Positions 28,743 to 64,000 of a stretch of 64,000 nucleotides of DNA are shown here, in pieces. Positions within the stretch are counted from its first letter, which is position 1, and each line of letters begins with the position of its first letter. A model generated the notes under the pieces. That model was not told the origin of the DNA. It did no database searches and saw only the letters and a program-made list of their open reading frames with translations. Both the position numbers and the translations under genes were made by a program. Location of the stretch: positions 305,146 through 369,145 of the IMG/VR virus record IMGVR_UViG_3300045971_000577; one strand, given 5' to 3'.

Positions 28743-28758
28743 AAGAAAAGGGAGTATT

Positions 28759-29178
28759 ATGGCATCAAATCAAAAAGGGTTTGTTCAACAACAGCGAATA
28801 ACTAGAAAGCCGTATTTCGTTGGATTCAATACTGTTGGGCAGCCTAATCCCCCATATTCGTTAACAAACCTCGAACTTGTAAAGAGGGACATTCTCAATC
28901 AATTTGCCACCCCGATAGGTTCGCGATTGATGCTTCCGTCGTTTGGCACGCGGATTTATGATCTTCTATTTGACCCGTTTGATGAAATAACAAAAAATGC
29001 CATAGTCGATGATGCTGTGCGAGTAGTCGGTGATGATCCACGAGTTCAACTTGTAAACATTGATGTGTTTCAGGAAGACCAATCACTCAACGTATCAATA
29101 GACCTATTATTTGTACCCGAATCAGTAACAGACAACCTATTTGTGTCTTTCTCGCTGAAAGATAAGGAAACATTCTAA
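28759..29178 (+). CDS. gp25: Baseplate wedge gp25
   Basis: TPIGSRLMLPSFGTRIYDLLFDP, DPRV. Confidence 0.9.
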   Translation: MASNQKGFVQQQRITRKPYFVGFNTVGQPNPPYSLTNLELVKRDILNQFATPIGSRLMLPSFGTRIYDLLFDPFDEITKNAIVDDAVRVVGDDPRVQLVNIDVFQEDQSLNVSIDLLFVPESVTDNLFVSFSLKDKETF

Positions 29179-53931: not shown

Positions 53932-54103
53932 TATGCGACTATAATACAAGATCAACTTGGTCAGATCAAGAGGGACCTATACAGTTTTGGTAAAAAATGG
54001 TTGCGCGGCTTGCCACCCTCGTCAAAATGTTACATCTCTTACAAATCTGTGTGCTGACTGGGATTTTTACGAACTGTTACAACTGTTGCATTTGTTACGT
54101 TTC

Positions 54104-54331
54104 TTACACCTTTACTGGTGCCTCGCCGTTGACTATCCATTGATCAACTGACGCCACGAGGCTAAGCGTTCGCCCACTGTCCCACTGCACAGCCACGTGC
54201 CACTGTCCCAGCACATGCCGTACGTCCAGCACCGTACCCGTTGACCATGGTGGTACGGGGTGGGGGTCGGGACCCATGCCAAGCAGGGTAATGCGTTGAC
54301 CTACGCGGGCGGGTGGAGTAAGCTGCATCAT
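54104..54331 (-). CDS. DUF4314-like protein
   Basis: GQRITLLGMGPDPHPVPPWSTGTV..V.WDSGRTLSL...D; ATG 6 nt after the -10 element. Confidence 0.7.
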   Translation of the reverse strand: MMQLTPPARVGQRITLLGMGPDPHPVPPWSTGTVLDVRHVLGQWHVAVQWDSGRTLSLVASVDQWIVNGEAPVKV

Positions 54332-54337
54332 GTGTAT

Positions 54338-54380
54338 ACTATAGCGCACACCACCCTACACGTCAATCACTGTTACATAT
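54338..54380 (-). promoter_or_regulatory. Early cassette promoter with upstream box
   Basis: ATATGTAACA-4-TTGACG-17-TATAGT. Confidence 0.75.
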
Positions 54381-54390
54381 GCTTACACCT

Positions 54391-54426
54391 GTAAGCACCT
54401 GTAAGCAAACGTAAGCAGATGTAACA
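54391..54426 (+). repeat. Four 10-bp-phased GTAA(G/C) repeats
   Basis: GTAAG at 54391, 54401, 54411; GTAAC at 54421. Confidence 0.8.
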
Positions 54427-54493
54427 ACGGTAAAGGTCTCGCACTGTGCCCGTCATACCTTGGTGACGCTATGAGGCAACGGTGAGCAAACGA

Positions 54494-54514
54494 AAGGGGC
54501 GTTCGCCGCCCCTT
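54494..54514 (-). terminator. Terminator hairpin
   Basis: AAGGGGCG-TTCGC-CGCCCCTT downstream of 54534. Confidence 0.7.
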
Positions 54515-54533
54515 GTCTGTACCCGCGCTGGTC

Positions 54534-54737
54534 TTACTTGATGCTGACGAGGACACCGTCCTTCAGCGTGCCCGTGGCGTACCACTTATGGGGTTGCGGG
54601 TAGTGCGGGCCTTCCAGGGACACCTCGCCGTCTTTGGGGCAGGGGAACGGTCCCGGGCTGTGGCAACGGACTTGCTTGCCATCAGCAATGGCACGCTTCA
54701 CTTCGGCCTTGCTCTTGAAGTTGGTATCGGTGTACAT
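54534..54737 (-). CDS. Small hypothetical protein
   Basis: Own promoter and AAGGA RBS. Confidence 0.75.
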   Translation of the reverse strand: MYTDTNFKSKAEVKRAIADGKQVRCHSPGPFPCPKDGEVSLEGPHYPQPHKWYATGTLKDGVLVSIK

Positions 54738-54744
54738 GGTGCAT

Positions 54745-54806
54745 TCCTTGTTGCGATGTATGTATTATGCAGCGTGGTGCGCTTGCTGTCAACCACTGTT
54801 ACATCT
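54745..54806 (-). promoter_or_regulatory. Early cassette promoter with box and leader
   Basis: AGATGTAACA-4-TTGACA-17-CATAAT-ACATACATCGCAACAAGGA. Confidence 0.85.
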
Positions 54807-54808
54807 TA

Positions 54809-54928
54809 TTACAGCTCGTGCCCGCCACACCAGACCAACCACCAAGTGCGGAAGTCCTCACACCCTGTCAGCGCTCCCTCCCGCATGTACGAGGCGTAGA
54901 AAGCTGGGCTTGCTTGGTGGATACTCAC
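54809..54928 (-). CDS. Small hypothetical protein (39 aa, GTG start)
   Basis: GTGA-coupled to the upstream gene; ends right at the next box. Confidence 0.5.
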   Translation of the reverse strand: MSIHQASPAFYASYMREGALTGCEDFRTWWLVWCGGHEL

Positions 54929-55140
54929 ATATCCCCGGGCAGGTAGTTGCAGCGGTTGCGGTAGCACTTGCCGTCCCACTCCGCCACGCTGATCGTATAG
55001 CCGATGCTGAGGAAGAACATCGCTTCGCCCATTGCCGCTGCTTGCCCAATCTCCATGCTGCGGTCTGGGTAGGCTGCGTCGTAGCTGACCGGGTCCCGGA
55101 TGCTGATGCGGGGCTGGGTCACATCGTATGTGGTGCGCAT
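54925..55140 (-). CDS. Small hypothetical protein
   Basis: Start MRTTYDV after AAGGAG. Confidence 0.7.
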   Translation of the reverse strand: MRTTYDVTQPRISIRDPVSYDAAYPDRSMEIGQAAAMGEAMFFLSIGYTISVAEWDGKCYRNRCNYLPGDM

Positions 55141-55147
55141 GATTGCT

Positions 55148-55211
55148 GCTCCTTGTTGCGATGTTGTTACTATAATGCAACGAACAGGGGTTGTCAACCC
55201 CTGTTACATCT
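55148..55211 (-). promoter_or_regulatory. Early cassette promoter with box and leader
   Basis: AGATGTAACA-4-TTGACA-17-TATAGT-AACAACATCGCAACAAGGAG. Confidence 0.85.
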
Positions 55212-55225
55212 GTCTCGCGTGCTGC

Positions 55226-55513
55226 TCAGCAGACCTTGGCGAAGTAATGCACGACCACAGTGTGCATCGTCTGGGTCTGCCCGTCGGCGTACACGGTGCC
55301 GGGTTGCACTTCACATTCCGCGTCGGGTGAGGCGCACAAATTACGTTCCAGCCGTTGCTTGATTCCCACGGCGCGGTAGGCGTTGTGCTGCTGCGGTGAC
55401 ATGCAACGGAACACAGTCGCGCCGCTTTCCTTCGTGACCAGCACGGCCACATCCGAGGCCTTGATTCCTTCCATCTTGTACGCGAGCAGGATGATTTGGA
55501 TGACGACTTGCAT
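55226..55513 (-). CDS. Small hypothetical protein
   Basis: AAAGGA RBS, own promoter. Confidence 0.7.
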   Translation of the reverse strand: MQVVIQIILLAYKMEGIKASDVAVLVTKESGATVFRCMSPQQHNAYRAVGIKQRLERNLCASPDAECEVQPGTVYADGQTQTMHTVVVHYFAKVC

Positions 55514-55552
55514 GTTGTTTCCTTTGTGTTGCTGCGTTGTTGCAGTGTTTAA

Positions 55553-55595
55553 ACTATAACGCAGGTTGAATGCTTATGCAAGCACTGTTACATTT
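55553..55595 (-). promoter_or_regulatory. Early cassette promoter with box
   Basis: AAATGTAACA-4-TTGCAT-17-TATAGT. Confidence 0.75.
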
Positions 55596-55619
55596 ACTTA
55601 CAAGCTGCCGGCCGGCATA

Positions 55620-56126
55620 AGCCTCGAGGTTAAGGTTAAAGACCTTAGCCCAGTGTCTAGCCCTAGTAGAGGCTTTTGCAACTTAGACTAATTTTTAGAT
55701 CGCAGCTTTAAGTCTGCTGCCGGCGAGCCTCGTGTATGCTCAAGGTCAACCGCGGTTACGTTATGAGGCTTATCGCAATAAGTCTTAGATTCTTGTTGAC
55801 CTGCCCGGACTTTTGCGATAAAATGACATTTATTGCTTGCGCAGAATGACCTACGGCTCTACACGAAAAATAGCCTCACAATGCAAAAGGCAACTACAAG
55901 TGGTCTATAGATCAACGTGTGAGGCTTTGCTGCAAAGCCCTAGATTCTTAGATCAGTTGTCTGTAAGCCTCACAGACGCGTTTTAAGATCACAAGCGGTC
56001 GCTTGCTCAGCTCTTGAGGCTTTGCGGGCAGAGCTCTGTCTGTGTGGTCAAGTGCGAGCAAACCCCTGTAAGCCTCACTTGTGGCCCAGTTACTGGGCAA
56101 AGACCTAATCTTTAGTTAGCGAGGCA
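55620..56126. repeat. Array of five AGCCTC...GAGGC(T/A) inverted pairs
   Basis: AGCCTC at 55620, 55726, 55872, 55966, 56071; GAGGC at 55669, 55765, 55921, 56016, 56121. Confidence 0.8.
55796..55824 (+). promoter_or_regulatory. Sigma70 promoter facing non-coding DNA
   Basis: TTGACC-17-TAAAAT. Confidence 0.55.
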
Positions 56127-56164
56127 GCGGTGGTCAAACGACTGGGCACCCGTAAGTGCCCAGT
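55831..56164 (+). ncRNA. Candidate ~330-nt structured ncRNA
   Basis: Promoter at 55796, no ORF of 60 aa or more, three repeated stems, closing hairpin ACTGGGCAC-6-GTGCCCAGT (56141-56164). Confidence 0.35.
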
Positions 56165-56205
56165 GCTCAAAAGAACCGCTTGTAGGGGCGTTTAGCCCCC
56201 TTGCC

Positions 56206-56433
56206 CTACCAGGGCTCGCACATATTGGGAAACGTGTTCGTCTCCTCCAGCACCGTCAACGCCCGCGCCGCTGCTGCGTAGGCCTCGTCTTCCGTGTCCC
56301 AGATCGGCGCGCTGGCGCAGTTGTTGGCGAGGTATTCCTGGCCCGGGTCGCCAGCAAATGTGGAGAAGCACGAACGCCACTTGCCGTTGGCTGCCTGTTC
56401 GGGCGCGCTGACTTCGGTGCGGATCTTGATCAT
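56206..56433 (-). CDS. Small hypothetical protein
   Basis: AAGGAG RBS, own promoter. Confidence 0.75.
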   Translation of the reverse strand: MIKIRTEVSAPEQAANGKWRSCFSTFAGDPGQEYLANNCASAPIWDTEDEAYAAAARALTVLEETNTFPNMCEPW

Positions 56434-56438
56434 GCTGT

Positions 56439-56502
56439 GCTCCTTGTTGCGATGTTGTTACTATAACGGAGTTGGGAGGCTCCGTCAAGCACTGTTACAT
56501 CT
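56439..56502 (-). promoter_or_regulatory. Early cassette promoter with box and leader
   Basis: AGATGTAACA-4-TTGACG-17-TATAGT-AACAACATCGCAACAAGGAG. Confidence 0.85.
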
Positions 56503-56701
56503 ATTTCTTCACAGCGTCAGCAACGGCTTCGTAGGAGTCAGTCGCCACCTCGATGGTCTTGTCCGTCGCCACCGAGATCGCCTTCGAGGCTTTCTTCACC
56601 TCGGACTGGTTGTCCTTGTAGAGGATGATGCCTTGGCCCGCCAGCAGCAGGGCAACGATGCTGGCGATGGCGCCCACAAACACATTCTTGAACGTCTTCA
56701 T
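56501..56701 (-). CDS. Small single-TM protein
   Basis: N-terminal hydrophobic helix; its stop overlaps the next box. Confidence 0.75.
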   Translation of the reverse strand: MKTFKNVFVGAIASIVALLLAGQGIILYKDNQSEVKKASKAISVATDKTIEVATDSYEAVADAVKK

Positions 56702-56728
56702 CTGTATTCCTTAAGTTGCAATGTCACA

Positions 56729-56771
56729 ATAATAGCTGCATACGGGCCGTCTGTCAACCCTTATTACATCT
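56729..56771 (-). promoter_or_regulatory. Early cassette promoter with box
   Basis: AGATGTAATA-4-TTGACA-17-TATTAT. Confidence 0.8.
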
Positions 56772-56943
56772 GCTTACACCACTTCTCTTCCTCGCACAAC
56801 AGCTCGTCGTCAGTGGCGTCGTCATTGAGGTAACGCTCACCGTCTTCAAAATCGCCTTCCTCACCGTCAGCTTCGTACTGTTCACGCATTGCGTGGATGA
56901 TGCGCTCGGCCTTCAAGGCGCGCTCTTGCCTGGTGAGTGCCAT
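56764..56943 (-). CDS. Small acidic hypothetical protein
   Basis: Start MALTRQE after AAGGAG. Confidence 0.75.
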   Translation of the reverse strand: MALTRQERALKAERIIHAMREQYEADGEEGDFEDGERYLNDDATDDELLCEEEKWCKQM

Positions 56944-56949
56944 TGTTGG

Positions 56950-57013
56950 CTCCTTGCTGTTGATGTATGTATTATGCAGGCTGGAACAGGGGCTGTCAAC
57001 CCCTGTTACATCT
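56950..57013 (-). promoter_or_regulatory. Early cassette promoter with box and leader
   Basis: AGATGTAACA-4-TTGACA-17-CATAAT-ACATACATCAACAGCAAGGAG. Confidence 0.85.
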
Positions 57014-57116
57014 TTCCAGTGACACGCTTCCACAGCTGGTGGAAGAAGCGCCTCACGCGGTTCTGCATCAGCTCGGCTGCGATTTCGAGGCGAAACTTCA
57101 TGTAGTCAGTGTTCAT
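57006..57116 (-). CDS. Small hypothetical protein (36 aa)
   Basis: MNTDYMKF starts 1 nt after the upstream stop; its own stop lies inside the box. Confidence 0.5.
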   Translation of the reverse strand: MNTDYMKFRLEIAAELMQNRVRRFFHQLWKRVTGKM

Positions 57117-57117
57117 G

Positions 57118-57315
57118 TTAGGCCTGCTGGATGTGTTGCGCGACGATGCGGGCGGCGCAGTCCTCGCCCTGGGCCATGTCGATCGCGCCCTGCTCCACGA
57201 GGTTGTAGCACAAGTCGCCGCCGTCGTAGAAGCCGTACTGCTCCTCCACAATCTTGTCGACCTTCTCCGAGAAGTCGTGCATGACTGCGTGCTGTGCCAT
57301 TGTGGTGCGGGGCAT
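57118..57315 (-). CDS. Small hypothetical protein
   Basis: AAGGAG RBS, own promoter. Confidence 0.75.
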   Translation of the reverse strand: MPRTTMAQHAVMHDFSEKVDKIVEEQYGFYDGGDLCYNLVEQGAIDMAQGEDCAARIVAQHIQQA

Positions 57316-57321
57316 GCTGTG

Positions 57322-57370
57322 CTCCTTGTTGCGATGTATGTATTATGCGCGTAGAAGCAGCAGTTGTCAA
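57322..57370 (-). promoter_or_regulatory. Early cassette promoter with leader (no box)
   Basis: TTGACA-17-CATAAT-ACATACATCGCAACAAGGAG. Confidence 0.85.
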
Positions 57371-57612
57371 CCGTAAATCTTCAAGGCCTCATCCATGACG
57401 ATCGTCTCCACACCGCCATCCAGAGGCATCAGGTGGTGCTGCTGGAACAGGACTTCCACGCCGGCGGCCAGCAGCACAGCGGGCATGAGCTTGTACAGAG
57501 GCTGCTGGCCGTTATCCATTTCGCACATCAGGATGTGAGCAACGGTGCGGCACGACCCCACTGGGCAACGGGCGTCACCCAGAATCATTACACGTTGTCC
57601 TATTGCGAGCAT
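57367..57612 (-). CDS. Small hypothetical protein
   Basis: Start MLAIGQR after AAGGAG. Confidence 0.7.
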   Translation of the reverse strand: MLAIGQRVMILGDARCPVGSCRTVAHILMCEMDNGQQPLYKLMPAVLLAAGVEVLFQQHHLMPLDGGVETIVMDEALKIYG

Positions 57613-57617
57613 GTTTG

Positions 57618-57680
57618 CTCCTTGCTGCGATGTGTGTACTTTATTATATAGTGGCTCCAGTGTCAAGCACTGTTACATCT
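57618..57680 (-). promoter_or_regulatory. Early cassette promoter with box and leader
   Basis: AGATGTAACA-4-TTGACA-17-TAAAGT-ACACACATCGCAGCAAGGAG. Confidence 0.8.
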
Positions 57681-57693
57681 GCTTACGCCTGCA

Positions 57694-57779
57694 CTGCCTC
57701 ATTCATCGGTCCAAGACCATTGAGCCACTACATGCGAGGCTGCTGCTGCCTCATTCATCGGTCCAAGACCATTGAGCCA
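57694..57779 (+). repeat. 34-bp direct repeat, two copies, 18-bp spacer
   Basis: CTGCCTCATTCATCGGTCCAAGACCATTGAGCCA at 57694 and 57746. Confidence 0.9.
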
Positions 57780-57807
57780 ACGCGGTGAGACCGCGTGACG
57801 ATCCGCC

Positions 57808-57949
57808 AGATGTAACAAGGTGTAACAACGGTTGCATTGATGCGCAGTGGTGTTATAGTTATGACATGGAGACAGCAGTGCAACAGCAAGCAAACAAGCA
57901 AAACTGTTACACTTTAGTTGTTGTCCAAAGCGCCCCAAAGAGTTATAGT
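57808..57949 (+). promoter_or_regulatory. Two tandem rightward promoters, the first with a double box
   Basis: AGATGTAACA-AGGTGTAACA-4-TTGCAT-16-TATAGT; TTGTCC-17-TATAGT. Confidence 0.7.
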
Positions 57950-57994
57950 TTAGTCACTGCAACACACGCTGCAAAGCAGCAAGAAAGGTAGACC

Positions 57995-58534
57995 ATGGAC
58001 AAGGGAATCCGCCCGTACGTGAACGCCAAGTTCATCGAGCTCAACGCCCAGCGCAAGGCGGGCACGCTGACCAACACGCAGTTCCGCAAGAACGTGATGT
58101 GCGACGCGATGGAAGCGTTTGGCATCACCCTGGCGAGCGCCGCGACGCACTACAACCATGCGTTCCAGGCGGTGAAGGCGGCGACACCGACGGAAGTGGA
58201 AGGCCTGGGCCGCCCCGACGACAAGAAGGGCGGGCGCAAGCGCAAGGAAGTCGCAGCCCCGACGGTGGCCAGCGTCATCCCCGTGGACCCGGCCGCGCTG
58301 CTGCAAGGGCTGCTGAATGCCCCGGCTGCGGTGCAGGTGGAGACGGCGCAAGCCGTGGAAACGCCCGCAGCCGACCCCAACGACGCCGGCGAGACGGGCG
58401 AAGTGCAGACGGTGTTCAACGTGTGCAAGAAGTCCGACGGCAGCGTGGTGGCAGAAGGCGTGAGCCTGGAAGAAGCCAAGGCGCTGGTGGAAGCGGCGGC
58501 CAAGGCCAAGAAGGCCAAGCTGTACTGGGTCTAA
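57995..58534 (+). CDS. Hypothetical protein, MDKGIR paralogue A (possible HTH-like DNA binder)
   Basis: FRKNVM...FGITLASAATHYN..GLGRP; paralogue at 61642-62070. Confidence 0.8.
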   Translation: MDKGIRPYVNAKFIELNAQRKAGTLTNTQFRKNVMCDAMEAFGITLASAATHYNHAFQAVKAATPTEVEGLGRPDDKKGGRKRKEVAAPTVASVIPVDPAALLQGLLNAPAAVQVETAQAVETPAADPNDAGETGEVQTVFNVCKKSDGSVVAEGVSLEEAKALVEAAAKAKKAKLYWV

Positions 58535-58550
58535 GCACCCAAGGTGGGAA

Positions 58551-58570
58551 GGGGGCGCAAGCCCCCTATT
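58551..58570 (+). terminator. Terminator hairpin
   Basis: GGGGGC-GCAA-GCCCCC-TATT. Confidence 0.65.
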
Positions 58571-58613
58571 CGCGCGACCAAACCCAGGTCAGAATGCAAG
58601 AGAGGAATCCAAA

Positions 58614-58808
58614 ATGATCAGTGTGATTCTGGTTGATGGAACTACCCGCATGCACATGCCGAGCAGCCGGTGGTCATTGGACGTGCAGGCCTCGTTGGCT
58701 CAGAAGGGCCACCAGCTGCAAGACCTCGGACCTGCTCCGGAGAACGACCCGCGCGATGAGGCCGAGAAGGCACGCGTCATGGAGCTTCTCGACTCCACAG
58801 GGCTGTAG
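58614..58808 (+). CDS. Small hypothetical protein
   Basis: GAGGA RBS. Confidence 0.6.
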   Translation: MISVILVDGTTRMHMPSSRWSLDVQASLAQKGHQLQDLGPAPENDPRDEAEKARVMELLDSTGL

Positions 58809-58815
58809 CAAGATC

Positions 58816-58920
58816 AGCCTCGGAACACGTCGTGAGATCGCTGATCCGACCTTCCGAGGCTACCCTGCGACATGCCTCGGGCGCGCTGTCGAGGCCCGTT
58901 GATCCTACCGCCCGAGGCAT
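58816..58920. repeat. Two GCCTC...GAGGC stem elements
   Basis: AGCCTCGGAA/TTCCGAGGCT (10 bp) and ATGCCTCGGGCG/CGCCCGAGGCAT (12 bp). Confidence 0.85.
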
Positions 58921-58961
58921 GTAACAAGATGTAACGGGGCAAGATGTAACTGGATGTAACA
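58920..58961 (+). repeat. Four TGTAAC boxes with no promoter
   Basis: TGTAAC at 58920, 58930, 58945, 58955. Confidence 0.85.
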
Positions 58962-59133
58962 ATCCAGTTCCGAGATTGAAACCCGTGCAGGCTTTCTACA
59001 CAGGAAACCTATTCAAGAGAAAAGGCCTATTAGGCCTAATCTCGTTTCCGAATCACACTACCCGGGATGCTTGCAGCTAGCGTTTAGCTATGCATTAGCC
59101 ATTTTCTGGCTAATACATTCGGCTACTTCGTGC

Positions 59134-59382
59134 TTACAGCACAAAGCCGTTGACGCACGGGGACGGGGCAAGCTCGGGGTCGCTAAACATGTCCGCCAGC
59201 ACCATGTCCATCTGGCAGTCATCCGTCTCGGGATCGTCAGCTGCCAGAACAGCATCGCCAAGGGCAGCGGCAACGCGCTTGCGTTGCCGCTCGTTGATCA
59301 CGATCGTGTACGTCCCGGGGTCGGGCATGCTGTGCTCGATGGGCATCTCGTAGGGCTTGAGCGTTGCGGGCGTGATGGGCAT
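59134..59382 (-). CDS. Small hypothetical protein
   Basis: AGGA RBS; promoter TTGCAT-17-TATACT at 59408-59436. Confidence 0.7.
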   Translation of the reverse strand: MPITPATLKPYEMPIEHSMPDPGTYTIVINERQRKRVAAALGDAVLAADDPETDDCQMDMVLADMFSDPELAPSPCVNGFVL

Positions 59383-59566
59383 GCTGTGTCCTAGTTGCTA
59401 TGCTTACAGTATAATGCAGAGCAGGAAGCAATGCAACCTGCTGTTTGATCTCAAGCTGCAAAGGCCTCTAGGCGTTTAGGCTCATAGGCCAAGATCCTGT
59501 GCGAGAACTTGTCGTAGGATTTGGACCTGTATTTCCAAATCTGGTCACGAATTTTAAATCGGAAAG

Positions 59567-59812
59567 TTAGGCAGTGTCTTTTGACCGCATGCACTCGCAC
59601 TCGTGTTGCTCAAGCTGAGTAAGCGTATCCGGCTTTGCTTCGCGTGCATTCGCTGGGTCGTTAGCCCACTTGCGGTCTTGCTCTACAAAATGCTTCTCGC
59701 CGTACACACAAAGCCCGACCGCCAGCAGGGCGAGGAGTGCCCCGCCCATGTGTGCAGTTGTTAGACCGTACAGGGCAATGAAGCCAAACAGGAGTGCCAA
59801 GCTGCGCATCAT
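59567..59812 (-). CDS. Small membrane protein
   Basis: Start MMRSLALL, ATGA-coupled; hydrophobic hairpin. Confidence 0.65.
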   Translation of the reverse strand: MMRSLALLFGFIALYGLTTAHMGGALLALLAVGLCVYGEKHFVEQDRKWANDPANAREAKPDTLTQLEQHECECMRSKDTA

Positions 59813-60051
59813 GACTTCCTGAACACCACGATGTTGGGCGCGACCTGCTCGATGAAGTACCAGGCGCCAAACAAGAACGCCAGGATGTTGATCACAGGGC
59901 AGAGAGTTACTGTGAGTCCAATGAGCAGGTTTGACAGCGTCAAGGTCTTCTCGCTCTCCAGCGTGGCATGCTTCATCTCGTAATAGGTGCAGAAGCCGAG
60001 CATGCCACCAGTCAGCAGCACGCACGCCAGGTAGAGCAAAAAGAAGCTCAT
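59809..60051 (-). CDS. Two-TM membrane protein
   Basis: Start MSFFLLY, ATGA-coupled. Confidence 0.7.
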   Translation of the reverse strand: MSFFLLYLACVLLTGGMLGFCTYYEMKHATLESEKTLTLSNLLIGLTVTLCPVINILAFLFGAWYFIEQVAPNIVVFRKS

Positions 60052-60326
60052 GCCATCAGCCCCTCGTAGATGTGCTTGTTGTTGTTGATCAGCGCCAGCA
60101 TCTCGCAAATTTGCTTGAACACACGCACGGCCTCCTCGTCGAACTCCTTGTACAAGAAGTCAACGTCGGTGATCTGCGCCCAAGGTACGTCGACATCGTA
60201 CCGGTTCCAATTGGGCCTGTGCAAGTCGTCAAGCATCACATTCACCCCGCGATGGTGGATGTCCATGACGATTACGCGAGTGTCGTCACTCAGCGTCACG
60301 TTCTCAGTGCGGGTGATTGTGTTCAT
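60048..60326 (-). CDS. Hypothetical protein (probably leaderless)
   Basis: TTGACA-17-TACAAT (60333-60361), then 6 nt and ATG. Confidence 0.75.
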   Translation of the reverse strand: MNTITRTENVTLSDDTRVIVMDIHHRGVNVMLDDLHRPNWNRYDVDVPWAQITDVDFLYKEFDEEAVRVFKQICEMLALINNNKHIYEGLMA

Positions 60327-60338
60327 GTTTGTATTGTA

Positions 60339-60464
60339 TTAGTCCTGCTGCGGTTTGTCAACAGGCACTTCGGTTTGTTTGGGCTGTTCCTGACCTTCCA
60401 TTTGTTCCAGGAAGTCGTCAAGGTCATTGTCGGGAATGCTGCCGTGTTCTTGTTGTTTGGTCAT
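60339..60464 (-). CDS. 41-aa acidic peptide (not in the ORF track)
   Basis: MTKQQEHGSIPDNDLDDFLEQME..; AGGAG RBS; promoter TTGACT-17-TATAAT at 60485-60513. Confidence 0.6.
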   Translation of the reverse strand: MTKQQEHGSIPDNDLDDFLEQMEGQEQPKQTEVPVDKPQQD

Positions 60465-60509
60465 TTCCTTCTCCTGCTGTTAGTATTATACTTAGCAGAA
60501 TGGAAATAG

Positions 60510-60908
60510 TCAACGGCGGGCTATCTGATCCTGCGGCCACTTCGCCCTTACCTGGTAGCGGCGTAGCTCTGCAGGAGTGCTGAACTGTTGGTGTGCATTG
60601 TAGAACCAATACTGCTGAGCTTCACGCTCGTGCAGGATCACAATCGGCTCATACCGGAACTCGGGGAACTGGGTTGCCGTAACATCGACTACATGATCAG
60701 CAGTGATTACGAACACATGGGCGCCCACATCGTCTTCGGACATGTGCATCTCTGCCTCGATCCCTGCTACCTTGAGTCGCTTGTGCAACTCCGAGGAAGC
60801 GATTGCACAGAACCCGCAGAGCGTGTGCTTCGAGTACAGCGGGTCCTGCGCTTCGGCCCACTCACGCACCTCTTGCGCGATGTTGCGAATGCGTTGCAGC
60901 GTGCTCAT
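60510..60908 (-). CDS. Putative papain/transglutaminase-like Cys-His-Asp enzyme
   Basis: Start MSTLQR (ATGA-coupled); GFCAIAS, AHVFV, VVDVTATQF. Confidence 0.6.
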   Translation of the reverse strand: MSTLQRIRNIAQEVREWAEAQDPLYSKHTLCGFCAIASSELHKRLKVAGIEAEMHMSEDDVGAHVFVITADHVVDVTATQFPEFRYEPIVILHEREAQQYWFYNAHQQFSTPAELRRYQVRAKWPQDQIARR

Positions 60909-61132
60909 CCGAAGCAGATGCCCTTCTTGACCATCGTGTCCGGCGACAGCGCGGAGCACACGATCTTGTGCTGGGTGGTATTGTAGAGCAGGTAGTCCTT
61001 CATGCAACCTGCAGCACGGTACAGCAGCACCATGCGCGATTCAGCGATGTCGACGCTCTCACCGCGGTGGATGAGTTTGTCCTTCTCCATGCTGTCGTCT
61101 GCATCGGTTTCGTAGACTTCGTACATAGCCAA
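60905..61132 (-). CDS. Small hypothetical protein
   Basis: AAGGAG leader; likely start at the second Met. Confidence 0.7.
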   Translation of the reverse strand: MAMYEVYETDADDSMEKDKLIHRGESVDIAESRMVLLYRAAGCMKDYLLYNTTQHKIVCSALSPDTMVKKGICFG

Positions 61133-61181
61133 CTCCTTGCTGCGATGTATGTATTATGCAGGGACTAGCCCTGCATGTCTA
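61133..61181 (-). promoter_or_regulatory. Early cassette promoter with leader
   Basis: TAGACA-17-CATAAT-ACATACATCGCAGCAAGGAG. Confidence 0.8.
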
Positions 61182-61187
61182 CCACTT

Positions 61188-61469
61188 TTAGGCGGCCGGC
61201 CCCACGCCGCGGATGTAGTAGCTCAAGTACGTGGCCCGCGTGCTGAAGCCCTTTGCGGTCAGTTCCTTGTTGATTTCTTCCACCACAGGGCGGATGTGCT
61301 GGGCGCTGCCGACATCGAACGCCACGTAGCGGACGTTGCAACCGCGGCGCTCACGCGGGGCCAGGCCCACCGGCAAGTCGGTGTAGCTCTTCATGTACTT
61401 GATACGTGCGTTGTCCAACGCCTTGCGCACCACTGCGCGGAACTCCAGGGTAGTTGCAGGATAGGGCAT
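61188..61469 (-). CDS. Small basic hypothetical protein
   Basis: Start MPYPATT after AGGA. Confidence 0.7.
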   Translation of the reverse strand: MPYPATTLEFRAVVRKALDNARIKYMKSYTDLPVGLAPRERRGCNVRYVAFDVGSAQHIRPVVEEINKELTAKGFSTRATYLSYYIRGVGPAA

Positions 61470-61475
61470 TGTGTG

Positions 61476-61540
61476 TCCTGTATGTTGCGATGTATGTATT
61501 ATGCGCTGATAGGACACACAGGTCAACCTCTGTTACATCT
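61476..61540 (-). promoter_or_regulatory. Early cassette promoter with box and leader
   Basis: AGATGTAACA-4-TTGACC-17-CATAAT-ACATACATCGCAAC. Confidence 0.85.
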
Positions 61541-61602
61541 CTGGCCTCACAGCATGTTTTGCGATCGATCAAGATGCATTGCGAGGCATCTTAGGCCAAA
61601 CG

Positions 61603-61623
61603 AAAAGGGGCCGTAGCCCCTTT
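61603..61623 (-). terminator. Terminator
   Basis: AAAAGGGGC-CGTA-GCCCCTTT. Confidence 0.75.
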
Positions 61624-61641
61624 GTGCCCTTGCTTGTTGCG

Positions 61642-62070
61642 TTAGGCTGCCGTGCCTTCCAGCACCACGGGCGTCACCGCCAGTTGCAGCAGCTCGCAAT
61701 CCGTCACATCGGACATCGTGGCTGGCGTGCCTTCCAGCAGCAGGGCAGCCGTTTCAGCCGGGTCCAGCGCGACGATCGGGATGCCAGCAGCGGTCTCGGT
61801 CTTCTTCTTGCGCCCGCCGTTGTTCTTGCCTTCCGGGCGGCCCAGGCCGCTGACCAGTTCCGGCGTCGCGGCCTTCACCAGTTGGAGCGCGTCGTTGTAG
61901 TGCGTCGCCGCGGATGCCAGCGTGCAGCCGAACTGTTCCATCAGCGTCGCCATGACGTGCTTGCGGAACGTGGTGTTGCCCTTGTCGCCAGTGAACGCCT
62001 GGCCCTTGCGGCGCAGTTCGTTTTGCTCGACGAACAGGTTGCGAGCGAAGCTGCGAATTCCCTTATCCAT
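61642..62070 (-). CDS. Hypothetical protein, MDKGIR paralogue B
   Basis: FRKHVM...FGCTLASAATHYN..GLGRP. Confidence 0.8.
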   Translation of the reverse strand: MDKGIRSFARNLFVEQNELRRKGQAFTGDKGNTTFRKHVMATLMEQFGCTLASAATHYNDALQLVKAATPELVSGLGRPEGKNNGGRKKKTETAAGIPIVALDPAETAALLLEGTPATMSDVTDCELLQLAVTPVVLEGTAA

Positions 62071-62114
62071 TTGTGACTCCTTCTTGCTACTGTGTAGCGT
62101 GTTGCGATGTAGTT

Positions 62115-62157
62115 ACTATAGCAGCGGTGGGCCTAGTGGTCTACCACTGTTACATCT
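62115..62157 (-). promoter_or_regulatory. Early cassette promoter with box
   Basis: AGATGTAACA-4-TAGACC-17-TATAGT. Confidence 0.8.
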
Positions 62158-62158
62158 T

Positions 62159-62437
62159 TTAGGCCAGCAGCACCACCGTGAGTTGCACGCGGAACGTGAT
62201 GCCCAGGTGGTTGAACAACTCCTCGAGGATGAAATCTGCAAGGTCGACGTCACAACGCATGAGGCTGTCGACGTACTGATCGAAACCCGGGATGTCGTCC
62301 TTCATCAGCGGGTCCCGCATGCAGTCGAGGCTGATGAGCACCTTCTGCTTGCCTTCCGGGCTGAAGCTGTTGCTGTCGTCCTGTTCGAAACGGCGACGCA
62401 GGTTGCTGATGCTGTGAATGACAGTGTCGACTGACAT
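62159..62437 (-). CDS. Small hypothetical protein
   Basis: Own promoter TAGACA-17-CATAAT at 62466-62494. Confidence 0.7.
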   Translation of the reverse strand: MSVDTVIHSISNLRRRFEQDDSNSFSPEGKQKVLISLDCMRDPLMKDDIPGFDQYVDSLMRCDVDLADFILEELFNHLGITFRVQLTVVLLA

Positions 62438-62504
62438 GGCGTTGCTTTGTTGCTGCGATGTATATATTATGCAGGGCTGGTCCCTGCATGTCTACCACTT
62501 TATG

Positions 62505-63368
62505 TCAGCCCATGAAGCTCAACGGAATGCCAACCTTGGCGCAGTTTGCCTTGAAGGTCCCACGTGCCAGCTGGCGATCGTAGCCGTTGGCGGCAATCAT
62601 GGCAGCGATGATCGTTTCGTAACCGTGGCCAGCGCGGTAACCCTGCAGCATGATGCGACGGCTGATGCTCGCCTTGCTTTCACCTGCAGCGGGCAGCACG
62701 TTGGGCGCAGGCAGGATGCAGCGCGGAGCAGGGGGCAGCAAGCGCGGAGCAACAGCGGGCACATACACACGGGCTTGCACAGGCAGCGCAGGGGCCACGG
62801 TCATCGTGGGCTGCTTCACGATGGGTGCCGCAAGCGTCTGCCCACGCGCACCAACGATGCTGTACGCACAGGCTGCGTGGATGCTGCCCTTGTTGTGGCG
62901 CAGGCGGATGGTAGTGCCCAGCTGGATCTTGCGGTGGTGACGGTCACCAACGCGCACCGTGTGCCCCTTGTCGCTGGTGTATTCGTACGTGATGCCCTTG
63001 CCGTACACCACTTCCTCTTGGTGACGCGTGCGACCGCTGCCGCCCAGGGCGAGGCAGATGCGCTCCCAGCCCGCGTCGTGGTTCTTGCCCAAGTCCGGCT
63101 GGATGAAGCACAGGATGTGCGCGTATTCGTGCGGCACAGTGCTGTTGAGCACGTGATCGAAAGCTTCACGCGACAGCATGTCGGTGTTGAACTTCACGAT
63201 GTAGTTGGACATCACCGGGTCGCGGTACTTCAGCCCGTGTGCCTTGCCAGCCGCCTTGCCCTTCAGGTCGAAGCTGACGCGCACGCGGGACATGTCCACG
63301 TTGTAGAGCTGATACGCACGGGCAACGACTTCCTTGCACTTGGCAAGGATTTGTTCACGGGGCGTCAT
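62505..63368 (-). CDS. SprT-like zinc metalloprotease with C-terminal extension
   Basis: KAAGKA, TVPHEYAHIL, HDAGW. Confidence 0.85.
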   Translation of the reverse strand: MTPREQILAKCKEVVARAYQLYNVDMSRVRVSFDLKGKAAGKAHGLKYRDPVMSNYIVKFNTDMLSREAFDHVLNSTVPHEYAHILCFIQPDLGKNHDAGWERICLALGGSGRTRHQEEVVYGKGITYEYTSDKGHTVRVGDRHHRKIQLGTTIRLRHNKGSIHAACAYSIVGARGQTLAAPIVKQPTMTVAPALPVQARVYVPAVAPRLLPPAPRCILPAPNVLPAAGESKASISRRIMLQGYRAGHGYETIIAAMIAANGYDRQLARGTFKANCAKVGIPLSFMG

Positions 63369-63377
63369 TTTTGCTTG

Positions 63378-63443
63378 CTCCTGTTTGCTGCGATATATGT
63401 ATTATGCAGTCAGGAACCGGTCTGGTCGACCACTGTTACATCT
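63378..63443 (-). promoter_or_regulatory. Early cassette promoter with box and leader
   Basis: AGATGTAACA-4-TCGACC-17-CATAAT-ACATATATCGCAGCAAACAGGAG. Confidence 0.8.
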
Positions 63444-63446
63444 GCC

Positions 63447-63554
63447 TCACACTGTGTCGTCAATGCTCGTGAGCAGGAACAAGAGGCCAAAGACCCAGTG
63501 CCCTGTGTAGAAACAGAACACCGCCATCAGCAGAGGAGTGGTTTGAAACTTCAC
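63447..63554 (-). CDS. 35-aa membrane micro-protein (GTG start)
   Basis: MKFQTTPLLMAVFCFYTGHWVFGLLFLLTSIDDTV. Confidence 0.55.
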   Translation of the reverse strand: MKFQTTPLLMAVFCFYTGHWVFGLLFLLTSIDDTV

Positions 63555-63564
63555 GTGCCTTGCC

Positions 63565-63666
63565 TTAGATGCTTGCGGCAATGACAAAGCACACGAGGGC
63601 GATCACCCAGTGTCCAGTGACAAGGGCGATGACGCCAGCGAAAACCAATGCTACGGATGTGCTCAT
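63565..63666 (-). CDS. 33-aa membrane micro-protein
   Basis: MSTSVALVFAGVIALVTGHWVIALVCFVIAASI; GAGG RBS. Confidence 0.6.
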   Translation of the reverse strand: MSTSVALVFAGVIALVTGHWVIALVCFVIAASI

Positions 63667-63668
63667 GC

Positions 63669-63923
63669 TTACCTCGGGCTGCTAACACGGAAGTGGAAAT
63701 CACGCGGGGCACGACCTTCGAGACGTGCCAGCTGACGTTCGATGGCCTGAACATCAGCGATCTGCGATTGGATGCGGACCATGGCGCCGGGCCACGAATC
63801 ACCGAAGCGGGCCACCTCGCCGTTGTGCTCCGAGATGACTTCGTAGAGACCCTCCAGGGCTTCCCAGTCAGTCGCTTCGTTGGCGTAACGGATGAACTCG
63901 TCACGCGTCATCGGCTTCGACAT
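63669..63923 (-). CDS. Small hypothetical protein
   Basis: Start MSKPMTR after AAGGAG. Confidence 0.75.
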   Translation of the reverse strand: MSKPMTRDEFIRYANEATDWEALEGLYEVISEHNGEVARFGDSWPGAMVRIQSQIADVQAIERQLARLEGRAPRDFHFRVSSPR

Positions 63924-63930
63924 GTTGTTG

Positions 63931-63980
63931 GCTCCTTGCTGCGATGTCTGTATTATGCACGCAAGGAGCCACCCTGTCAA
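63931..63980 (-). promoter_or_regulatory. Early cassette promoter with leader
   Basis: TTGACA-17-CATAAT-ACAGACATCGCAGCAAGGAG. Confidence 0.85.
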
Positions 63981-64000
63981 CCGCTAGTTGAACGCCTGCC

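What the first reader, a model, noticed from the sequence alone, without database searches (positions are those of the whole stretch)
54338..63980. Early region built from ~20 self-contained promoter-gene cassettes with a conserved box and leader
Seen: about 21 sigma70 promoters in 10 kb, all but one with a 17-bp spacer. Twelve carry AGATGTAACA (or one mismatch) exactly 4 bp upstream of -35: 54371, 54797, 55202, 55586, 56493, 56762, 57004, 57671, 57818, 61531, 62148, 63434. Most share the leader ACATCGCA(A/G)CAAGGAG. Spacers and downstream genes are unrelated. The box often abuts or supplies the upstream stop codon (56501, 56764, 57006, 62159). Known: repeated early-promoter cassettes mediate gene shuffling in T4-type phages (PeSL elements), and SPO1 has a multi-promoter host-takeover module. 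Inference: a gene-capture and shuffling array under one regulator, with the shared leader possibly allowing coordinated translational control.
Basis: partly seen in the sequence, partly recalled or inferred. Interest (0 to 1): 0.85.

Follow-up and report, generated by a model that had tools for sequence, protein, structure and literature searches.

The report
Jumbo-phage early-gene promoter cassette array
The region is the last quarter of a roughly 40-kb block of small early genes in an uncultured jumbo phage, each gene driven by a near-perfect host-type promoter with a standard leader; relatives swap these genes cassette by cassette, and the block uses a completely different, GC-rich codon dialect from the rest of the genome.

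Summary
Window 54,3–64,0 kb holds 18 minus-strand and 3 plus-strand sigma70-type promoters. All but one have a 17-bp spacer. Eleven minus-strand promoters and one plus-strand promoter carry AGATGTAACA exactly 4 bp upstream of -35, and 11 share the leader core AYATCGCARCA.

The window is the end of a circularly assembled 369-kb IMG/VR contig whose capsid protein is 78% identical to Pseudomonas jumbo phage PA5oct. The array runs across the contig junction for about 40 kb and has at least 43 promoters.

The promoter and start-site unit (GG-TTGACA-N17-TATAAT-ACAnACAT) recurs on dozens of uncultured phage contigs. No sequenced cultured phage has it.

Close relatives keep the shared genes in the same order but replace, gain, lose or move single cassettes. 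Homology breaks cluster at the promoter-leader modules. This supports PeSL-like modular exchange, although the defining PeSL stem-loop is absent.

The box marks a sub-class confined to the last ~12 kb. Its 10-bp-phased copies also bracket a conserved, divergently transcribed gene (p1), which is a candidate regulator by context only.

The cassette genes have GC3 of 0.79 against 0.38 in the structural genes.

Verdict: a new variant of a known kind, of moderately high interest.

The parts
54000..64000 (-). Distal ~10 kb of the early-gene cassette array. It continues beyond 64000 across the contig junction for about 30 kb more. GC is about 0.56 against about 0.40 to the left of 54000.
63924..63980 (-). 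Promoter module P1 (TTGACA-17-CATAAT, leader ACATCGCAGCAAGGAG), no box; drives g1-g3
63369..63443 (-). Promoter module P2 with box 63434-63443; drives g4 (SprT-like)
62438..62494 (-). Promoter module P3 (TAGACA, hairpin spacer TGCAGGG-N5-CCCTGCA), no box; drives g5
62071..62157 (-). Promoter module P4 with box 62148-62157; drives g6 (p1 paralog)
61470..61540 (-). Promoter module P5 with box 61531-61540; drives g7
61127..61181 (-). Promoter module P6 (near-duplicate of P3), no box. It is 95.5% identical to L144 8612-8678, where it drives an unrelated gene.
60465..60513 (-). Promoter module P7 (TTGACT-17-TATAAT); drives g10
60327..60361 (-). Promoter module P8 (TTGACA-17-TACAAT). The ATG lies 6 nt after -10, so the mRNA is probably leaderless; drives g11-g13.
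59383..59436 (-). Promoter module P9 (TTGCAT-17-TATACT); drives g14
57613..57686 (-). Promoter module P10 with extended box GTAAGC-AGAT-GTAACA (57671-57686); drives g15
57316..57370 (-). Promoter module P11, no box; drives g16-g17
56944..57013 (-). Promoter module P12 with box 57004-57013; drives g18. The 170-bp unit of g17 plus this module is absent from L144.
56702..56771 (-). Promoter module P13 with box variant AGATGTAATA, which supplies the stop codon of g18; drives g19
56434..56502 (-). Promoter module P14 with box 56493-56502, which overlaps the stop codon of g19; drives g20
55514..55595 (-). Promoter module P15 (TTGCAT-17-TATAGT) with box variant AAATGTAACA; drives g21
55141..55211 (-). 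Promoter module P16 with box 55202-55211; drives g22-g23
54738..54806 (-). Promoter module P17 with box 54797-54806; drives g24
54332..54380 (-). Promoter module P18 with box variant ATATGTAACA. The ATG lies 6 nt after -10; drives g25.
57808..57949 (+). p1 regulatory region: tandem box 57808-57827 in 10-bp phase, distal promoter TTGCAT-16-TATAGT (57832-57859), inverted TGTTACA 57905-57911, and proximal promoter 57921-57949. This layout is conserved in seven genomes.
57995..58534 (+). p1, 179 aa, transcribed divergently from the cassettes. It has a three-helix N-terminal domain, an invariant GLGRP..KKGGRK linker and a small C-terminal domain. More than 750 metagenomic homologs exist, none named. 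It is the candidate box-binding regulator (inference).
58614..58808 (+). p2, 64 aa, co-oriented with p1; conserved in L144, L146, c153 and c385
58921..58961 (+). Array of four GATGTAAC copies with no promoter, downstream of p2 (spacings 6, 15 and 10 bp)
54381..54430 (-). 10-bp-phased array GTTACA / GCTTAC x3 / GTAAGC, ending in the box of P18
54028..54100 (-). Cluster of GTAACA-type repeats at the GC-rich/AT-rich boundary, which is the downstream end of the array
62505..63368 (-). g4, SprT-like zinc metalloprotease domain protein (287 aa). It is the only cassette product with a family match and is conserved in the arrays of L144, L146, c153, c210 and c101.
61642..62070 (-). g6, 142-aa paralog of p1 (56% identity over 112 aa)
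59567..60326 (-). g11-g12-g13, three overlapping small genes. Together with g14, p2 and p1 they form the block that stays collinear even in the distant relative c153.
61600..61622 (-). Intrinsic terminator after g6
59023..59037 (.). Bidirectional hairpin terminator between g14 and p2
56135..56200 (-). Two consecutive terminator hairpins after g20
54487..54513 (-). Intrinsic terminator after g24

Best explanation
This is the downstream quarter of the early (host-takeover-type) gene region of a PA5oct-related jumbo myovirus.

How it works (inferred unless marked as shown). Host sigma70 RNA polymerase reads at least 43 near-consensus promoters, about one per 0.5-1 kb, all on one strand. It needs no phage factor. 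Each promoter is a standard module: GG-TTGACA, exactly 17 bp, (C/T)ATAAT, ACAnAC, a start at the A of CAT, a short A/C-rich leader and AAGGAG. Each module feeds one to three small ORFan genes. Few terminators are present, so transcripts are nested.

The roughly 70-bp modules are the only sequence shared between neighbouring cassettes. They therefore act as portable homology, and recombination between them replaces, deletes, inserts or moves cassettes. The pattern in relatives is shown; the recombination mechanism is inferred.

A subset of modules, in the last ~12 kb of the array, has a 10-bp-phased GTAA(G/C)(C/A) repeat that runs into the -35 hexamer. The same repeat brackets the conserved divergent p1-p2 unit. 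The most likely reading is that a phage-encoded DNA-binding protein controls its own gene and this promoter sub-class. p1 is the best candidate, and the sign of the control is unknown (inference).

The array genes are kept in a GC3-rich codon regime (shown). The likely reason is that they are translated with the host's tRNA pool before the phage's own translation aids appear (inference).
For: Identity of the phage: the capsid protein is 77.7% identical to PA5oct, and portal, baseplate and giant structural protein genes are present. PA5oct has no phage RNA polymerase, expresses gp34-gp105 in its 39-kb terminal repeat early from one strand, and has TTGAC/TATAATA promoters (PMC7318152).

Promoter array.

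Extent of the array: the window is contig 305146-369145, the first 127 bases of the contig repeat the window's end, and the array continues to about contig position 30,700.

Family-wide consensus: derived from 602 promoters that do not contain the searched string. Leader copies occur on dozens of contigs and on no sequenced phage record.

Cassette turnover and breakpoints at the modules. The P6 module is 95.5% identical in L144 yet drives an unrelated gene there.

Box: its position and enrichment, its 10-bp phasing, and the conserved box layout upstream of p1 in seven genomes, including genomes whose cassette promoters lack the box.

Codon regimes: GC1/2/3 is 0.62/0.41/0.79 in cassette genes against 0.51/0.43/0.38 in large genes. 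Orthologs track the composition of their own array. The codons that late genes prefer and early genes avoid (AGA, TTA, ACA, CCA, GGA, TCA) are the ones read by the tRNAs PA5oct carries.

Not a chimera: the AT-rich/GC-rich junction recurs in independent assemblies.
Against: There are no expression data for this phage, so 'early' rests on promoter type and on analogy with PA5oct.

No array protein matches anything in PA5oct positions 1-45,000.

Breakpoints at modules are partly expected under any replacement mechanism, because conserved modules extend the alignments up to the replaced gene (caveat).

p1 has no detectable DNA-binding fold: best Foldseek E-value 1.9, nothing in Pfam, PHROGs, NCBIfam or PDB sequences.

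An apparently unrelated phage contig (L009) has the same box at the same distance from -35 and shares no protein with the source in the stretch held. This fits a host factor as well as it fits p1.

The rest of the source contig could not be read, so whether it has tRNA genes or an RNA polymerase is unknown.
Confidence: 0.7

Rival explanations
1. The box is not the operator of a phage regulator. It is read by a host protein: a transcription factor of the OmpR/PhoB or CII type that binds 10-bp-phased direct repeats overlapping -35, the alpha C-terminal domain of RNA polymerase, or a protein injected with the DNA that steers host polymerase to phage promoters.
For: The box occupies about -49 to -40, where the proximal UP subsite and class I/II activators bind (established knowledge). 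GTAACA-N4-TTGACA keeps a 10-bp register. L009, a 104-kb contig sharing no detected protein with the source, has AGATGTAACAG 4 bp upstream of TTGACA-N18-TATAAT and many TGTAACA copies. p1 shows no recognisable DNA-binding fold.
Against: The box is not A/T-tract-like. A scan of 185,579 bacterial and archaeal genomes found 59 stretches with a single hit, about the number expected by chance from my own estimate, and one stretch with three hits that is a coding repeat (L188). No host regulon appeared. The box layout upstream of p1 is conserved in all seven genomes examined, as expected for an autoregulated phage gene. Promoter-free box arrays flank the p1-p2 unit.
Confidence: 0.3
2. The similarity of the modules is only convergent selection for maximal promoter and ribosome-binding strength. 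Cassette turnover comes from ordinary illegitimate recombination, homing endonucleases or deletion, and the modules play no part in recombination.
For: The positions conserved across the whole family are the functional ones: -35, -10, the CAT start site and the Shine-Dalgarno sequence. A NUMOD3 homing-endonuclease-like gene is inserted between p1 and p2 in L144. Some breakpoints lie at plain gene boundaries without a promoter: 57114, 60907 and 63553.
Against: Non-functional parts of the modules are shared as well. P3 and P6 have the same spacer hairpin, and four consecutive c210 promoters share the spacer gggaggaaactccctgc. This indicates that modules are copied and do not merely converge. The P6 module is 95.5% identical to L144 against a 72-80% background and drives different genes in the two phages. 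Breakpoints are enriched 3- to 4-fold at the modules.
Confidence: 0.2
3. The GC-rich block is foreign DNA, either an assembly chimera or a recently acquired island from a GC-rich phage or host, and not an integral, maintained part of the genome.
For: There is a sharp GC step of 0.38 to 0.52 within 250 bp at 54,000. No array protein matches the PA5oct terminal repeat.
Against: The same AT-rich/GC-rich junction occurs in independent assemblies from other samples (L146, L023, L022). Arrays with the same promoter module exist on many jumbo-size contigs. Orthologs (p1, SprT) have GC3 that tracks their own array: 0.84-0.91 and 0.75-0.79 in the source-like genomes, against 0.56-0.61 and 0.45-0.53 in c210, c82 and c101. 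The PA5oct terminal repeat also has GC3-rich early genes.
Confidence: 0.03

Closest known systems
PeSL (promoter-early stem-loop) elements of T4-type phages (Arbiol et al. 2010, PMC2839356; Comeau et al. 2014, PMC4122927)
   Same: Both are repeated near-consensus TTGACA-N17-TATAAT early promoters in the intergenic spaces of ORFan-rich hyperplastic regions. In both, insertions, deletions and replacements between related phages are bounded by the repeated motif.
   Different: There is no stem-loop or terminator fused to the promoter. The repeated unit here extends downstream (start-site context, leader, Shine-Dalgarno) and, in one sub-class, upstream (the box). The array is one continuous block of about 40 kb with its own codon regime. 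The phage belongs to the PA5oct lineage and is not a T4-like phage.
Early region in the 39-kb long terminal repeat of Pseudomonas phage PA5oct (Lood et al. 2020, PMC7318152)
   Same: PA5oct is the closest cultured relative (capsid 77.7% identical). It has a block of about 40 kb of small genes on one strand, host-polymerase promoters TTGAC/TATAATA, early expression, non-coding RNAs inside the block, and GC3-rich genes in an AT-rich genome.
   Different: PA5oct has 32 promoters in the whole genome, and its repeat shows only scattered GC-rich islands, with no uniform module, box or leader. No proteins are shared. Whether the array here is a terminal repeat is unknown.
Host-takeover module in the terminal redundancy of Bacillus phage SPO1
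   Same: Both are dense clusters of small early genes, each with a strong host-sigma promoter and a strong ribosome-binding site.
   Different: The SPO1 module is about 13 kb with about 12 promoters. No cassette exchange, shared leader, upstream box or separate codon regime has been described for it.
Extended early-promoter consensus of T4 and T5
   Same: Phage early promoters in these systems are conserved beyond the two hexamers, including the upstream region and the initially transcribed sequence.
   Different: In T4 the upstream element is A/T-rich (UP-like). Here it is a specific GTAA(G/C)(C/A) repeat that also occurs away from promoters.
Activators that bind 10-bp-phased direct repeats overlapping -35 (lambda CII at TTGC-N6-TTGC; PhoB and OmpR boxes; from my own knowledge)
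   Same: The geometry is the same: GTAAGC-N4-GTAACA-N4-TTGACA.
   Different: Those promoters have poor -35 elements and depend on the activator. Here the -35 and -10 elements are near consensus, so repression or fine-tuning is at least as likely. No homologous protein was found.

Membership tests
PeSL elements | Repeated near-consensus sigma70 early promoter in intergenic spaces | tested here: met
   18 minus-strand promoters with 17-bp spacers in 10 kb; 40 sites found against 12.9 expected
PeSL elements | Stem-loop (terminator-like) fused immediately upstream of the promoter | tested here: not met
   Terminator-like sites: 9 found against 12.3 in shuffles. Mean folding energy of the 55 nt upstream of 17 promoters is -13.2, against -13.6 for random windows, p = 0.67. 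Only four terminators lie in the 10 kb.
PeSL elements | Located in a hyperplastic region of small genes of unknown function | tested here: met
   20 of the 27 curated products were scanned, and 19 of those have no Pfam or PHROGs family
PeSL elements | Insertions, deletions and replacements between close relatives bounded by the motif | tested here: met
   Cassette map against L144 and L146. 12 of 24 and 12 of 20 breakpoints lie within 12 bp of a module, against 4.0 and 3.3 expected. Caveat: conserved modules extend alignments.
PeSL elements | Excision of the DNA between two tandem elements as a mini-circle | not testable with these tools
   Needs PCR on infected cells or long reads
PeSL elements | Host genome is a T4-like phage | tested here: not met
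   The closest cultured relative is PA5oct (Arenbergviridae), at 77.7% capsid identity. All capsid matches outside the top 89 records, the T4-like phages among them, are below 60%.
Terminal-repeat early or host-takeover region (PA5oct, SPO1 type) | Cluster of small genes on one strand with host-sigma promoters and strong ribosome-binding sites | tested here: met
Terminal-repeat early or host-takeover region (PA5oct, SPO1 type) | Lies within the direct terminal repeat of the packaged genome | not testable with these tools
   Needs read coverage or end mapping. The contig closes on itself by 127 bases, which is compatible with a collapsed repeat but does not show one.
Terminal-repeat early or host-takeover region (PA5oct, SPO1 type) | Expressed first after infection | not testable with these tools
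   No transcriptome exists for this uncultured phage; shown only for PA5oct
Terminal-repeat early or host-takeover region (PA5oct, SPO1 type) | Gene content homologous to the PA5oct repeat | tested here: not met
   tblastn of all array ORFs against PA5oct 1-45,000 gave no hit at E of 1e-3 or better
T4 MotA-type middle promoters | Activator box centred near -30 that replaces the -35 element | tested here: not met
   The box lies at about -49 to -40 and the -35 hexamer is retained
UP element | A/T-rich tract between about -59 and -38 | tested here: inconclusive
   The position fits the proximal subsite, but the sequence AGATGTAACAGNGG is not an A-tract, and the motif also occurs in promoter-free arrays

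The most novel reading that the evidence does not exclude
A widespread lineage of uncultured AT-rich jumbo phages keeps its whole early programme of about 40 kb in a separate, host-like codon regime (GC3 0.79 against 0.38). It expresses that programme from more than 40 interchangeable promoter-leader modules. Early genes would then be translated with host tRNAs, and late genes would depend on phage-supplied tRNAs, which would make codon choice a timing device. Part of the array would be wired into the regulon of a new, unnamed family of phage DNA-binding proteins (p1) through a 10-bp-phased GTAA(G/C)(C/A) operator that has spread together with the promoter modules.
Probability: 0.3. Interest if true: 0.8.

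Novelty: new variant of a known kind. Interest (0 to 1): 0.6.

Why it matters
Early genes are where phages keep their host-takeover and anti-defence functions, and they are the least understood part of jumbo-phage genomes.

This array gives a sequence signature (GG-TTGACA-N17-TATAAT-ACAnACAT, with or without the box) that picks out the early gene set of a large, uncultured jumbo-phage group directly from metagenomes.

It extends promoter-mediated modular exchange, so far described for T4-like phages, to another lineage and to a form without the stem-loop.

The two codon regimes in one genome offer a direct test of whether codon usage and phage tRNAs set the timing of expression.

The promoter modules are also ready-made strong expression parts for GC-rich Gram-negative hosts.

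Tried and rejected
N4-like phage. I considered this because of the 3,191-aa ORF. I rejected it: the ORF is a virion structural protein (phrog_10938), and the genome has T4-type baseplate, portal and capsid genes.

Nucleotide matches in sequenced phages. Megablast of 54-64 kb found nothing. A 35-nt query of -10 plus leader gave only chance-level single hits.

p1 against sequenced phages. tblastn found no match.

Function of p1. Pfam, PHROGs, NCBIfam, a PDB sequence profile, Foldseek against the PDB and the ESM Atlas gave nothing significant. A faint Atlas lead to the phage T5 A2 family (score 0.59) is at chance level.

Host regulon for the box. The genome-contig scan gave single, chance-level hits. 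The one multi-hit locus (L188) is a tandem protein-coding repeat of a Bacteroidota surface protein.

Rfam. No match in 53.5-64 kb.

Burkholderia phage Matilda preprint (10.64898/2026.10.21.760668). It is not relevant: inverted repeats, 55% GC, and no promoters described.

GC excess of arrays over flanks in 28 other loci. The mean difference is only +3 points, and 23 of 28 are positive. This is weak, because most fetched 'flanks' probably still lie inside arrays. A clear contrast is seen only where a true boundary was captured (source, L023, L022, L146).

Contig positions 2,889-9,917 and everything outside the fetched loci could not be read. The total promoter count is therefore a lower bound, and the presence of tRNA or RNA polymerase genes in this phage is unknown.

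Full report
**1. Observation**

The motif AGATGTAACA, allowing one mismatch, occurs 26 times in the window against 5.2 +/- 2.0 in shuffles. Nineteen copies lie at or beyond 54,028. The promoter scan of 50-64 kb found 40 sites against 12.9 +/- 3.1 expected, and the best-scoring sites are minus-strand sites with 17-bp spacers.

I read the minus strand and ran my own scan. These give 18 minus-strand promoters between 63,980 and 54,338, all with 17-bp spacers. There are also three plus-strand promoters (57832, 57921, 55796), one of which has a 16-bp spacer.

In the array, 14 of the 15 sites with at most two mismatches are on one strand, and all 15 have 17-bp spacers. The other 54 kb has 24 such sites. 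These are spread over both strands and all spacer lengths, and none has the leader, box or start-site context.

Eleven minus-strand boxes sit exactly 4 bp upstream of a -35 hexamer. The leader core A(C/T)ATCGCA(A/G)CA occurs 11 times, only on the minus strand of the array. The full 16-mer occurs six times. An independent repeat finder recovers the modules as 63- to 77-nt families.

**2. What genome this is**

GC steps from about 0.40 to about 0.56 at 54,000, within 250 bp.

The large ORFs encode a T4-type major head protein, a portal, baseplate wedge and hub proteins, tail fibres and a 3,191-aa virion protein. The head protein is 77.7% identical to that of Pseudomonas jumbo phage PA5oct and 66-71% identical to those of other phages of 350-470 kb.

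A scan of IMG/VR for the box plus -35 pattern identified the source as IMGVR_UViG_3300045971_000577, 369,145 bp. The coordinates show that the window is contig 305,146-369,145. The first 127 bases of the contig repeat the window's end, so the assembly closes on itself.

**3. True extent of the array**

The same promoter modules continue on the same strand at contig 128-2,888. They continue again through contig 9,918 to about 30,700. Positions 2,889-9,917 could not be fetched.

The array is therefore about 40 kb long with at least 43 promoters.

The box class is confined to the last ~12 kb: 11 copies in the window plus two at contig 673 and 1,407. The upstream promoters have other upstream sequences, often TTCA(A/T)(A/T)TAG.

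**4. Family-wide distribution**

Many of these contigs are 100-385 kb long and carry two to six copies per fetched piece.

I took 709 distinct strong promoters from those loci. The 602 that do not contain the searched string give the consensus GG-TTGACA-N17-TATAAT-ACAnACAT, followed by an A-rich leader. The CAT matches the classical preferred start-site context (established knowledge). The part under the widest constraint is therefore the promoter plus start site. The CGCAACAAGGAG part is conserved within sub-clades.

No record in the 50,697-genome phage collection carries the array or the module.

PA5oct has a 39-kb terminal repeat whose genes gp34-gp105 are expressed early from one strand. 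It lacks a phage RNA polymerase and has 32 TTGAC/TATAATA promoters (PMC7318152). My scan of PA5oct positions 1-45,000 found only a few similar promoters (CATAAT-AATTACAACGCAAC...GGAGG) and no uniform array. No protein is shared with the array.

**5. Gene content**

Twenty of the 27 curated products were scanned against Pfam and PHROGs. Nineteen have no family in either library. The exception is a SprT-like metalloprotease-domain protein. This is typical of phage early regions.

**6. Test of shuffling**

Two contigs carrying p1 orthologs of 76% and 72% identity were fetched: L144 (ENA) and L146 (Logan). They match the window at 70-85% nucleotide identity in blocks.

At the protein level, these genes are shared with both relatives and collinear: g1, g4-g7, g9-g13, p2, p1, g20, g21 and g25. 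The differences are:

- g8, g15, g17, g19 and g22 have no counterpart in either relative, and unrelated small genes mostly occupy their positions.
- g14 is replaced.
- g16 and g18 are present only in L144.
- g23 and g24 are present only in L146, where g23 lies next to the p1-proximal cassette instead of after g22.
- The 170-bp unit made of g17 plus promoter P12 is absent from L144.
- L144 has a NUMOD3 homing-endonuclease-like gene between p1 and p2.

In the more distant contig c153 (about 50-65% amino-acid identity), one block (g11-g14, p2, p1) stays collinear. The other cassettes are permuted or missing.

Of the ends of collinear homology blocks, 12 of 24 (L144) and 12 of 20 (L146) lie within 12 bp of a promoter module. 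The expected numbers are 4.0 and 3.3 (P of about 2e-4 or below by simulation). Several fall in the leader a few bases before the ATG. The P6 module is 95.5% identical in L144, against a background of 72-80%, yet precedes an unrelated gene there.

One caveat applies. Because the modules are conserved, alignments of a retained neighbour will run up to the replaced gene whatever the mechanism. The test therefore supports module-bounded cassettes more firmly than it supports module-mediated recombination. The copying of whole modules, including functionally neutral spacers (P3 and P6; four consecutive c210 promoters), shows that modules do spread.

**7. Comparison with PeSLs**

PeSLs are composites of a stem-loop and an early sigma70 promoter. 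They are linked to insertions, deletions and swaps in the hyperplastic regions of T4-like phages (PMC4122927; PMC2839356).

Three of their features are met here: the repeated promoter, the ORFan-rich plastic region, and motif-bounded variation. The stem-loop is not met. Terminator-like sites are not enriched, and the 55 nt upstream of the promoters fold no better than random windows (p = 0.67). The phage is also not T4-like. The array works like a PeSL region but is not a member of that family.

**8. The box**

TGTAACA is the most enriched 7-mer in the array's non-coding DNA, with 17 copies against none in coding DNA.

The repeat families show that the box often extends to GTAAGC-AGAT-GTAACA-NNNN-TTGACA. 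That is three units in 10-bp register, the last being the -35 hexamer itself.

Promoter-free arrays of the same units lie at 58,921-58,961, at 54,381-54,430 and at the array's end, 54,028-54,100.

The p1-p2 unit is the only part of the region transcribed from the other strand, and these arrays flank it. Upstream of p1 orthologs in seven genomes the same layout recurs. A tandem box sits 4 bp upstream of a distal promoter, and an inverted TGTTACA sits 9 bp upstream of the proximal -35. This holds even in c210, c82 and c101, whose cassette promoters lack the box.

The simplest reading has two steps. An ancestral, probably autoregulatory, operator of p1 existed first. In the source sub-clade (source, L144, L146, c153, c385) it was then carried onto cassette promoters. 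This is inference.

p1 has more than 750 unnamed metagenomic homologs. Its predicted structure has a confident three-helix N-terminal domain, an invariant basic GLGRP..KKGGRK linker and a small C-terminal domain. No significant structural or sequence relative was found.

A host factor remains possible. L009, an apparently unrelated 104-kb phage contig, uses the same box at the same distance from -35. However, no bacterial genome shows a matching regulon.

**9. Two codon regimes**

Cassette genes have GC1/2/3 of 0.62/0.41/0.79, and the large structural genes 0.51/0.43/0.38. GC2 is nearly equal in the two sets, while GC3 differs by 0.41 and GC1 by 0.11, so the split lies mainly at third codon positions.

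Early genes almost never use AGA, TTA, CTA, ATA or AAA. Late genes use them freely.

The junction between the regimes recurs in independent assemblies, so it is not a chimera.

Orthologs track their own array. p1 has GC3 of 0.84-0.91 in source-like genomes and 0.56-0.61 in c210, c82 and c101. SprT has 0.75-0.79 against 0.45-0.53. The regime is therefore maintained within each lineage and was not imported from one donor.

The PA5oct repeat also contains GC3-rich genes (0.60-0.77) among AT-rich ones. [quoted passage not shown]

Differences in codon bias between early and late phage genes are known in general (title and abstract of PMC5683454). The size of the contrast here is unusual.

Selection for translation on host tRNAs is my preferred explanation. 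GC-biased gene conversion in a recombination-rich, possibly terminally repeated, region is an alternative that I could not test.

**10. Verdict**

The feature is real, much larger than reported, and common to a large group of uncultured jumbo phages. Its general nature is known: a host-polymerase early-gene array that evolves by cassette exchange. Four things are new:

- the standardised module without a stem-loop;
- the scale of the array;
- the box sub-class tied to a conserved unnamed protein;
- the sharply separate codon regime.

Noticed in passing
window 55620-56076 (core 55765-55844): A 450-bp gene-free stretch lies after two terminators. In it, GAGGCT and AGCCTC alternate about every 50 bp, as if closing four successive hairpins. 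An 80-bp core is 88.8% identical to L144, more conserved than the flanking genes. The consensus fold has 4 compensatory pairs (from only 3 sequences), and the whole stretch folds with z = -2.2. A conserved antisense promoter (TTGACC-17-TAAAAT, 55796-55824, plus strand) lies inside it. It may be a non-coding RNA like those in the PA5oct repeat, or a protein-binding array.
   Followed up: partly
window 57694-57779: A perfect 34-bp direct repeat (52-bp period) lies between the box of promoter P10 and the tandem box of p1. L144 and L024 have a duplicated segment of different sequence at the same place.
   Followed up: partly
L144 4875-5453 and 14451-14859: ORFs with weak and faint NUMOD3 matches, a domain typical of homing endonucleases. 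One is inserted exactly between p1 and p2, where the window has only 80 bp.
   Followed up: no
L009 (IMGVR_UViG_3300048672_000524, 53777-68386), about 5700-10900: A 104-kb contig (GC 0.43) shares no detected protein with the source. It has seven perfect or near-perfect TTGACA-N18-TATAAT promoters, each followed by TTTGGCGCA, and several run straight into a terminator hairpin. They are surrounded by TGTAACA repeats, and two have AGATGTAACAG 4 bp upstream of -35.
   Followed up: partly
window 60327-60361 and 54332-54366: In two cassettes the ATG lies only 6 nt after the -10 hexamer (TACAAT-ACAAAC-ATG and TATAGT-ATACAC-ATG). These genes would be translated from leaderless mRNAs.
   Followed up: no
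window 14355-15521 and 44572-46074: Two GC-rich islands (0.50-0.51) lie in the AT-rich structural region. Both genes match phrog_2295 and lie near tail-fibre genes, so they may be host-range proteins with their own composition.
   Followed up: no
L026 (PA5oct MK797984.1) 9167-9871, 15728-18107, 27937-29138, 33964-34425, 36838-37572: Genes in the PA5oct terminal repeat with GC3 of 0.53-0.77 (all but one at 0.60 or above), in a genome of about 33% GC. I found no mention of this in the passages of the PA5oct paper that I searched.
   Followed up: partly
window 62438-62494 and 61127-61181; L023 16627-17441: Promoter modules that share their whole spacer, including a hairpin (TGCAGGG-N5-CCCTGCA in the window; gggaggaaactccctgc four times in a row in L023), yet drive unrelated genes. 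The module itself is copied.
   Followed up: partly
window 57860-57994 and orthologous positions in L144, L146, c153, L023, L022: The transcript from the distal p1 promoter starts with a conserved ACATGGA(C/G)AGCAAACAAGCAAAC, a CAA-rich stretch. The short ORF it opens differs in length and frame between genomes, so the conservation is probably at the RNA or DNA level.
   Followed up: no
window 32940-42515: A 3,191-aa virion structural protein (phrog_10938) contains repeated domains shared with baseplate and fibre proteins.
   Followed up: no
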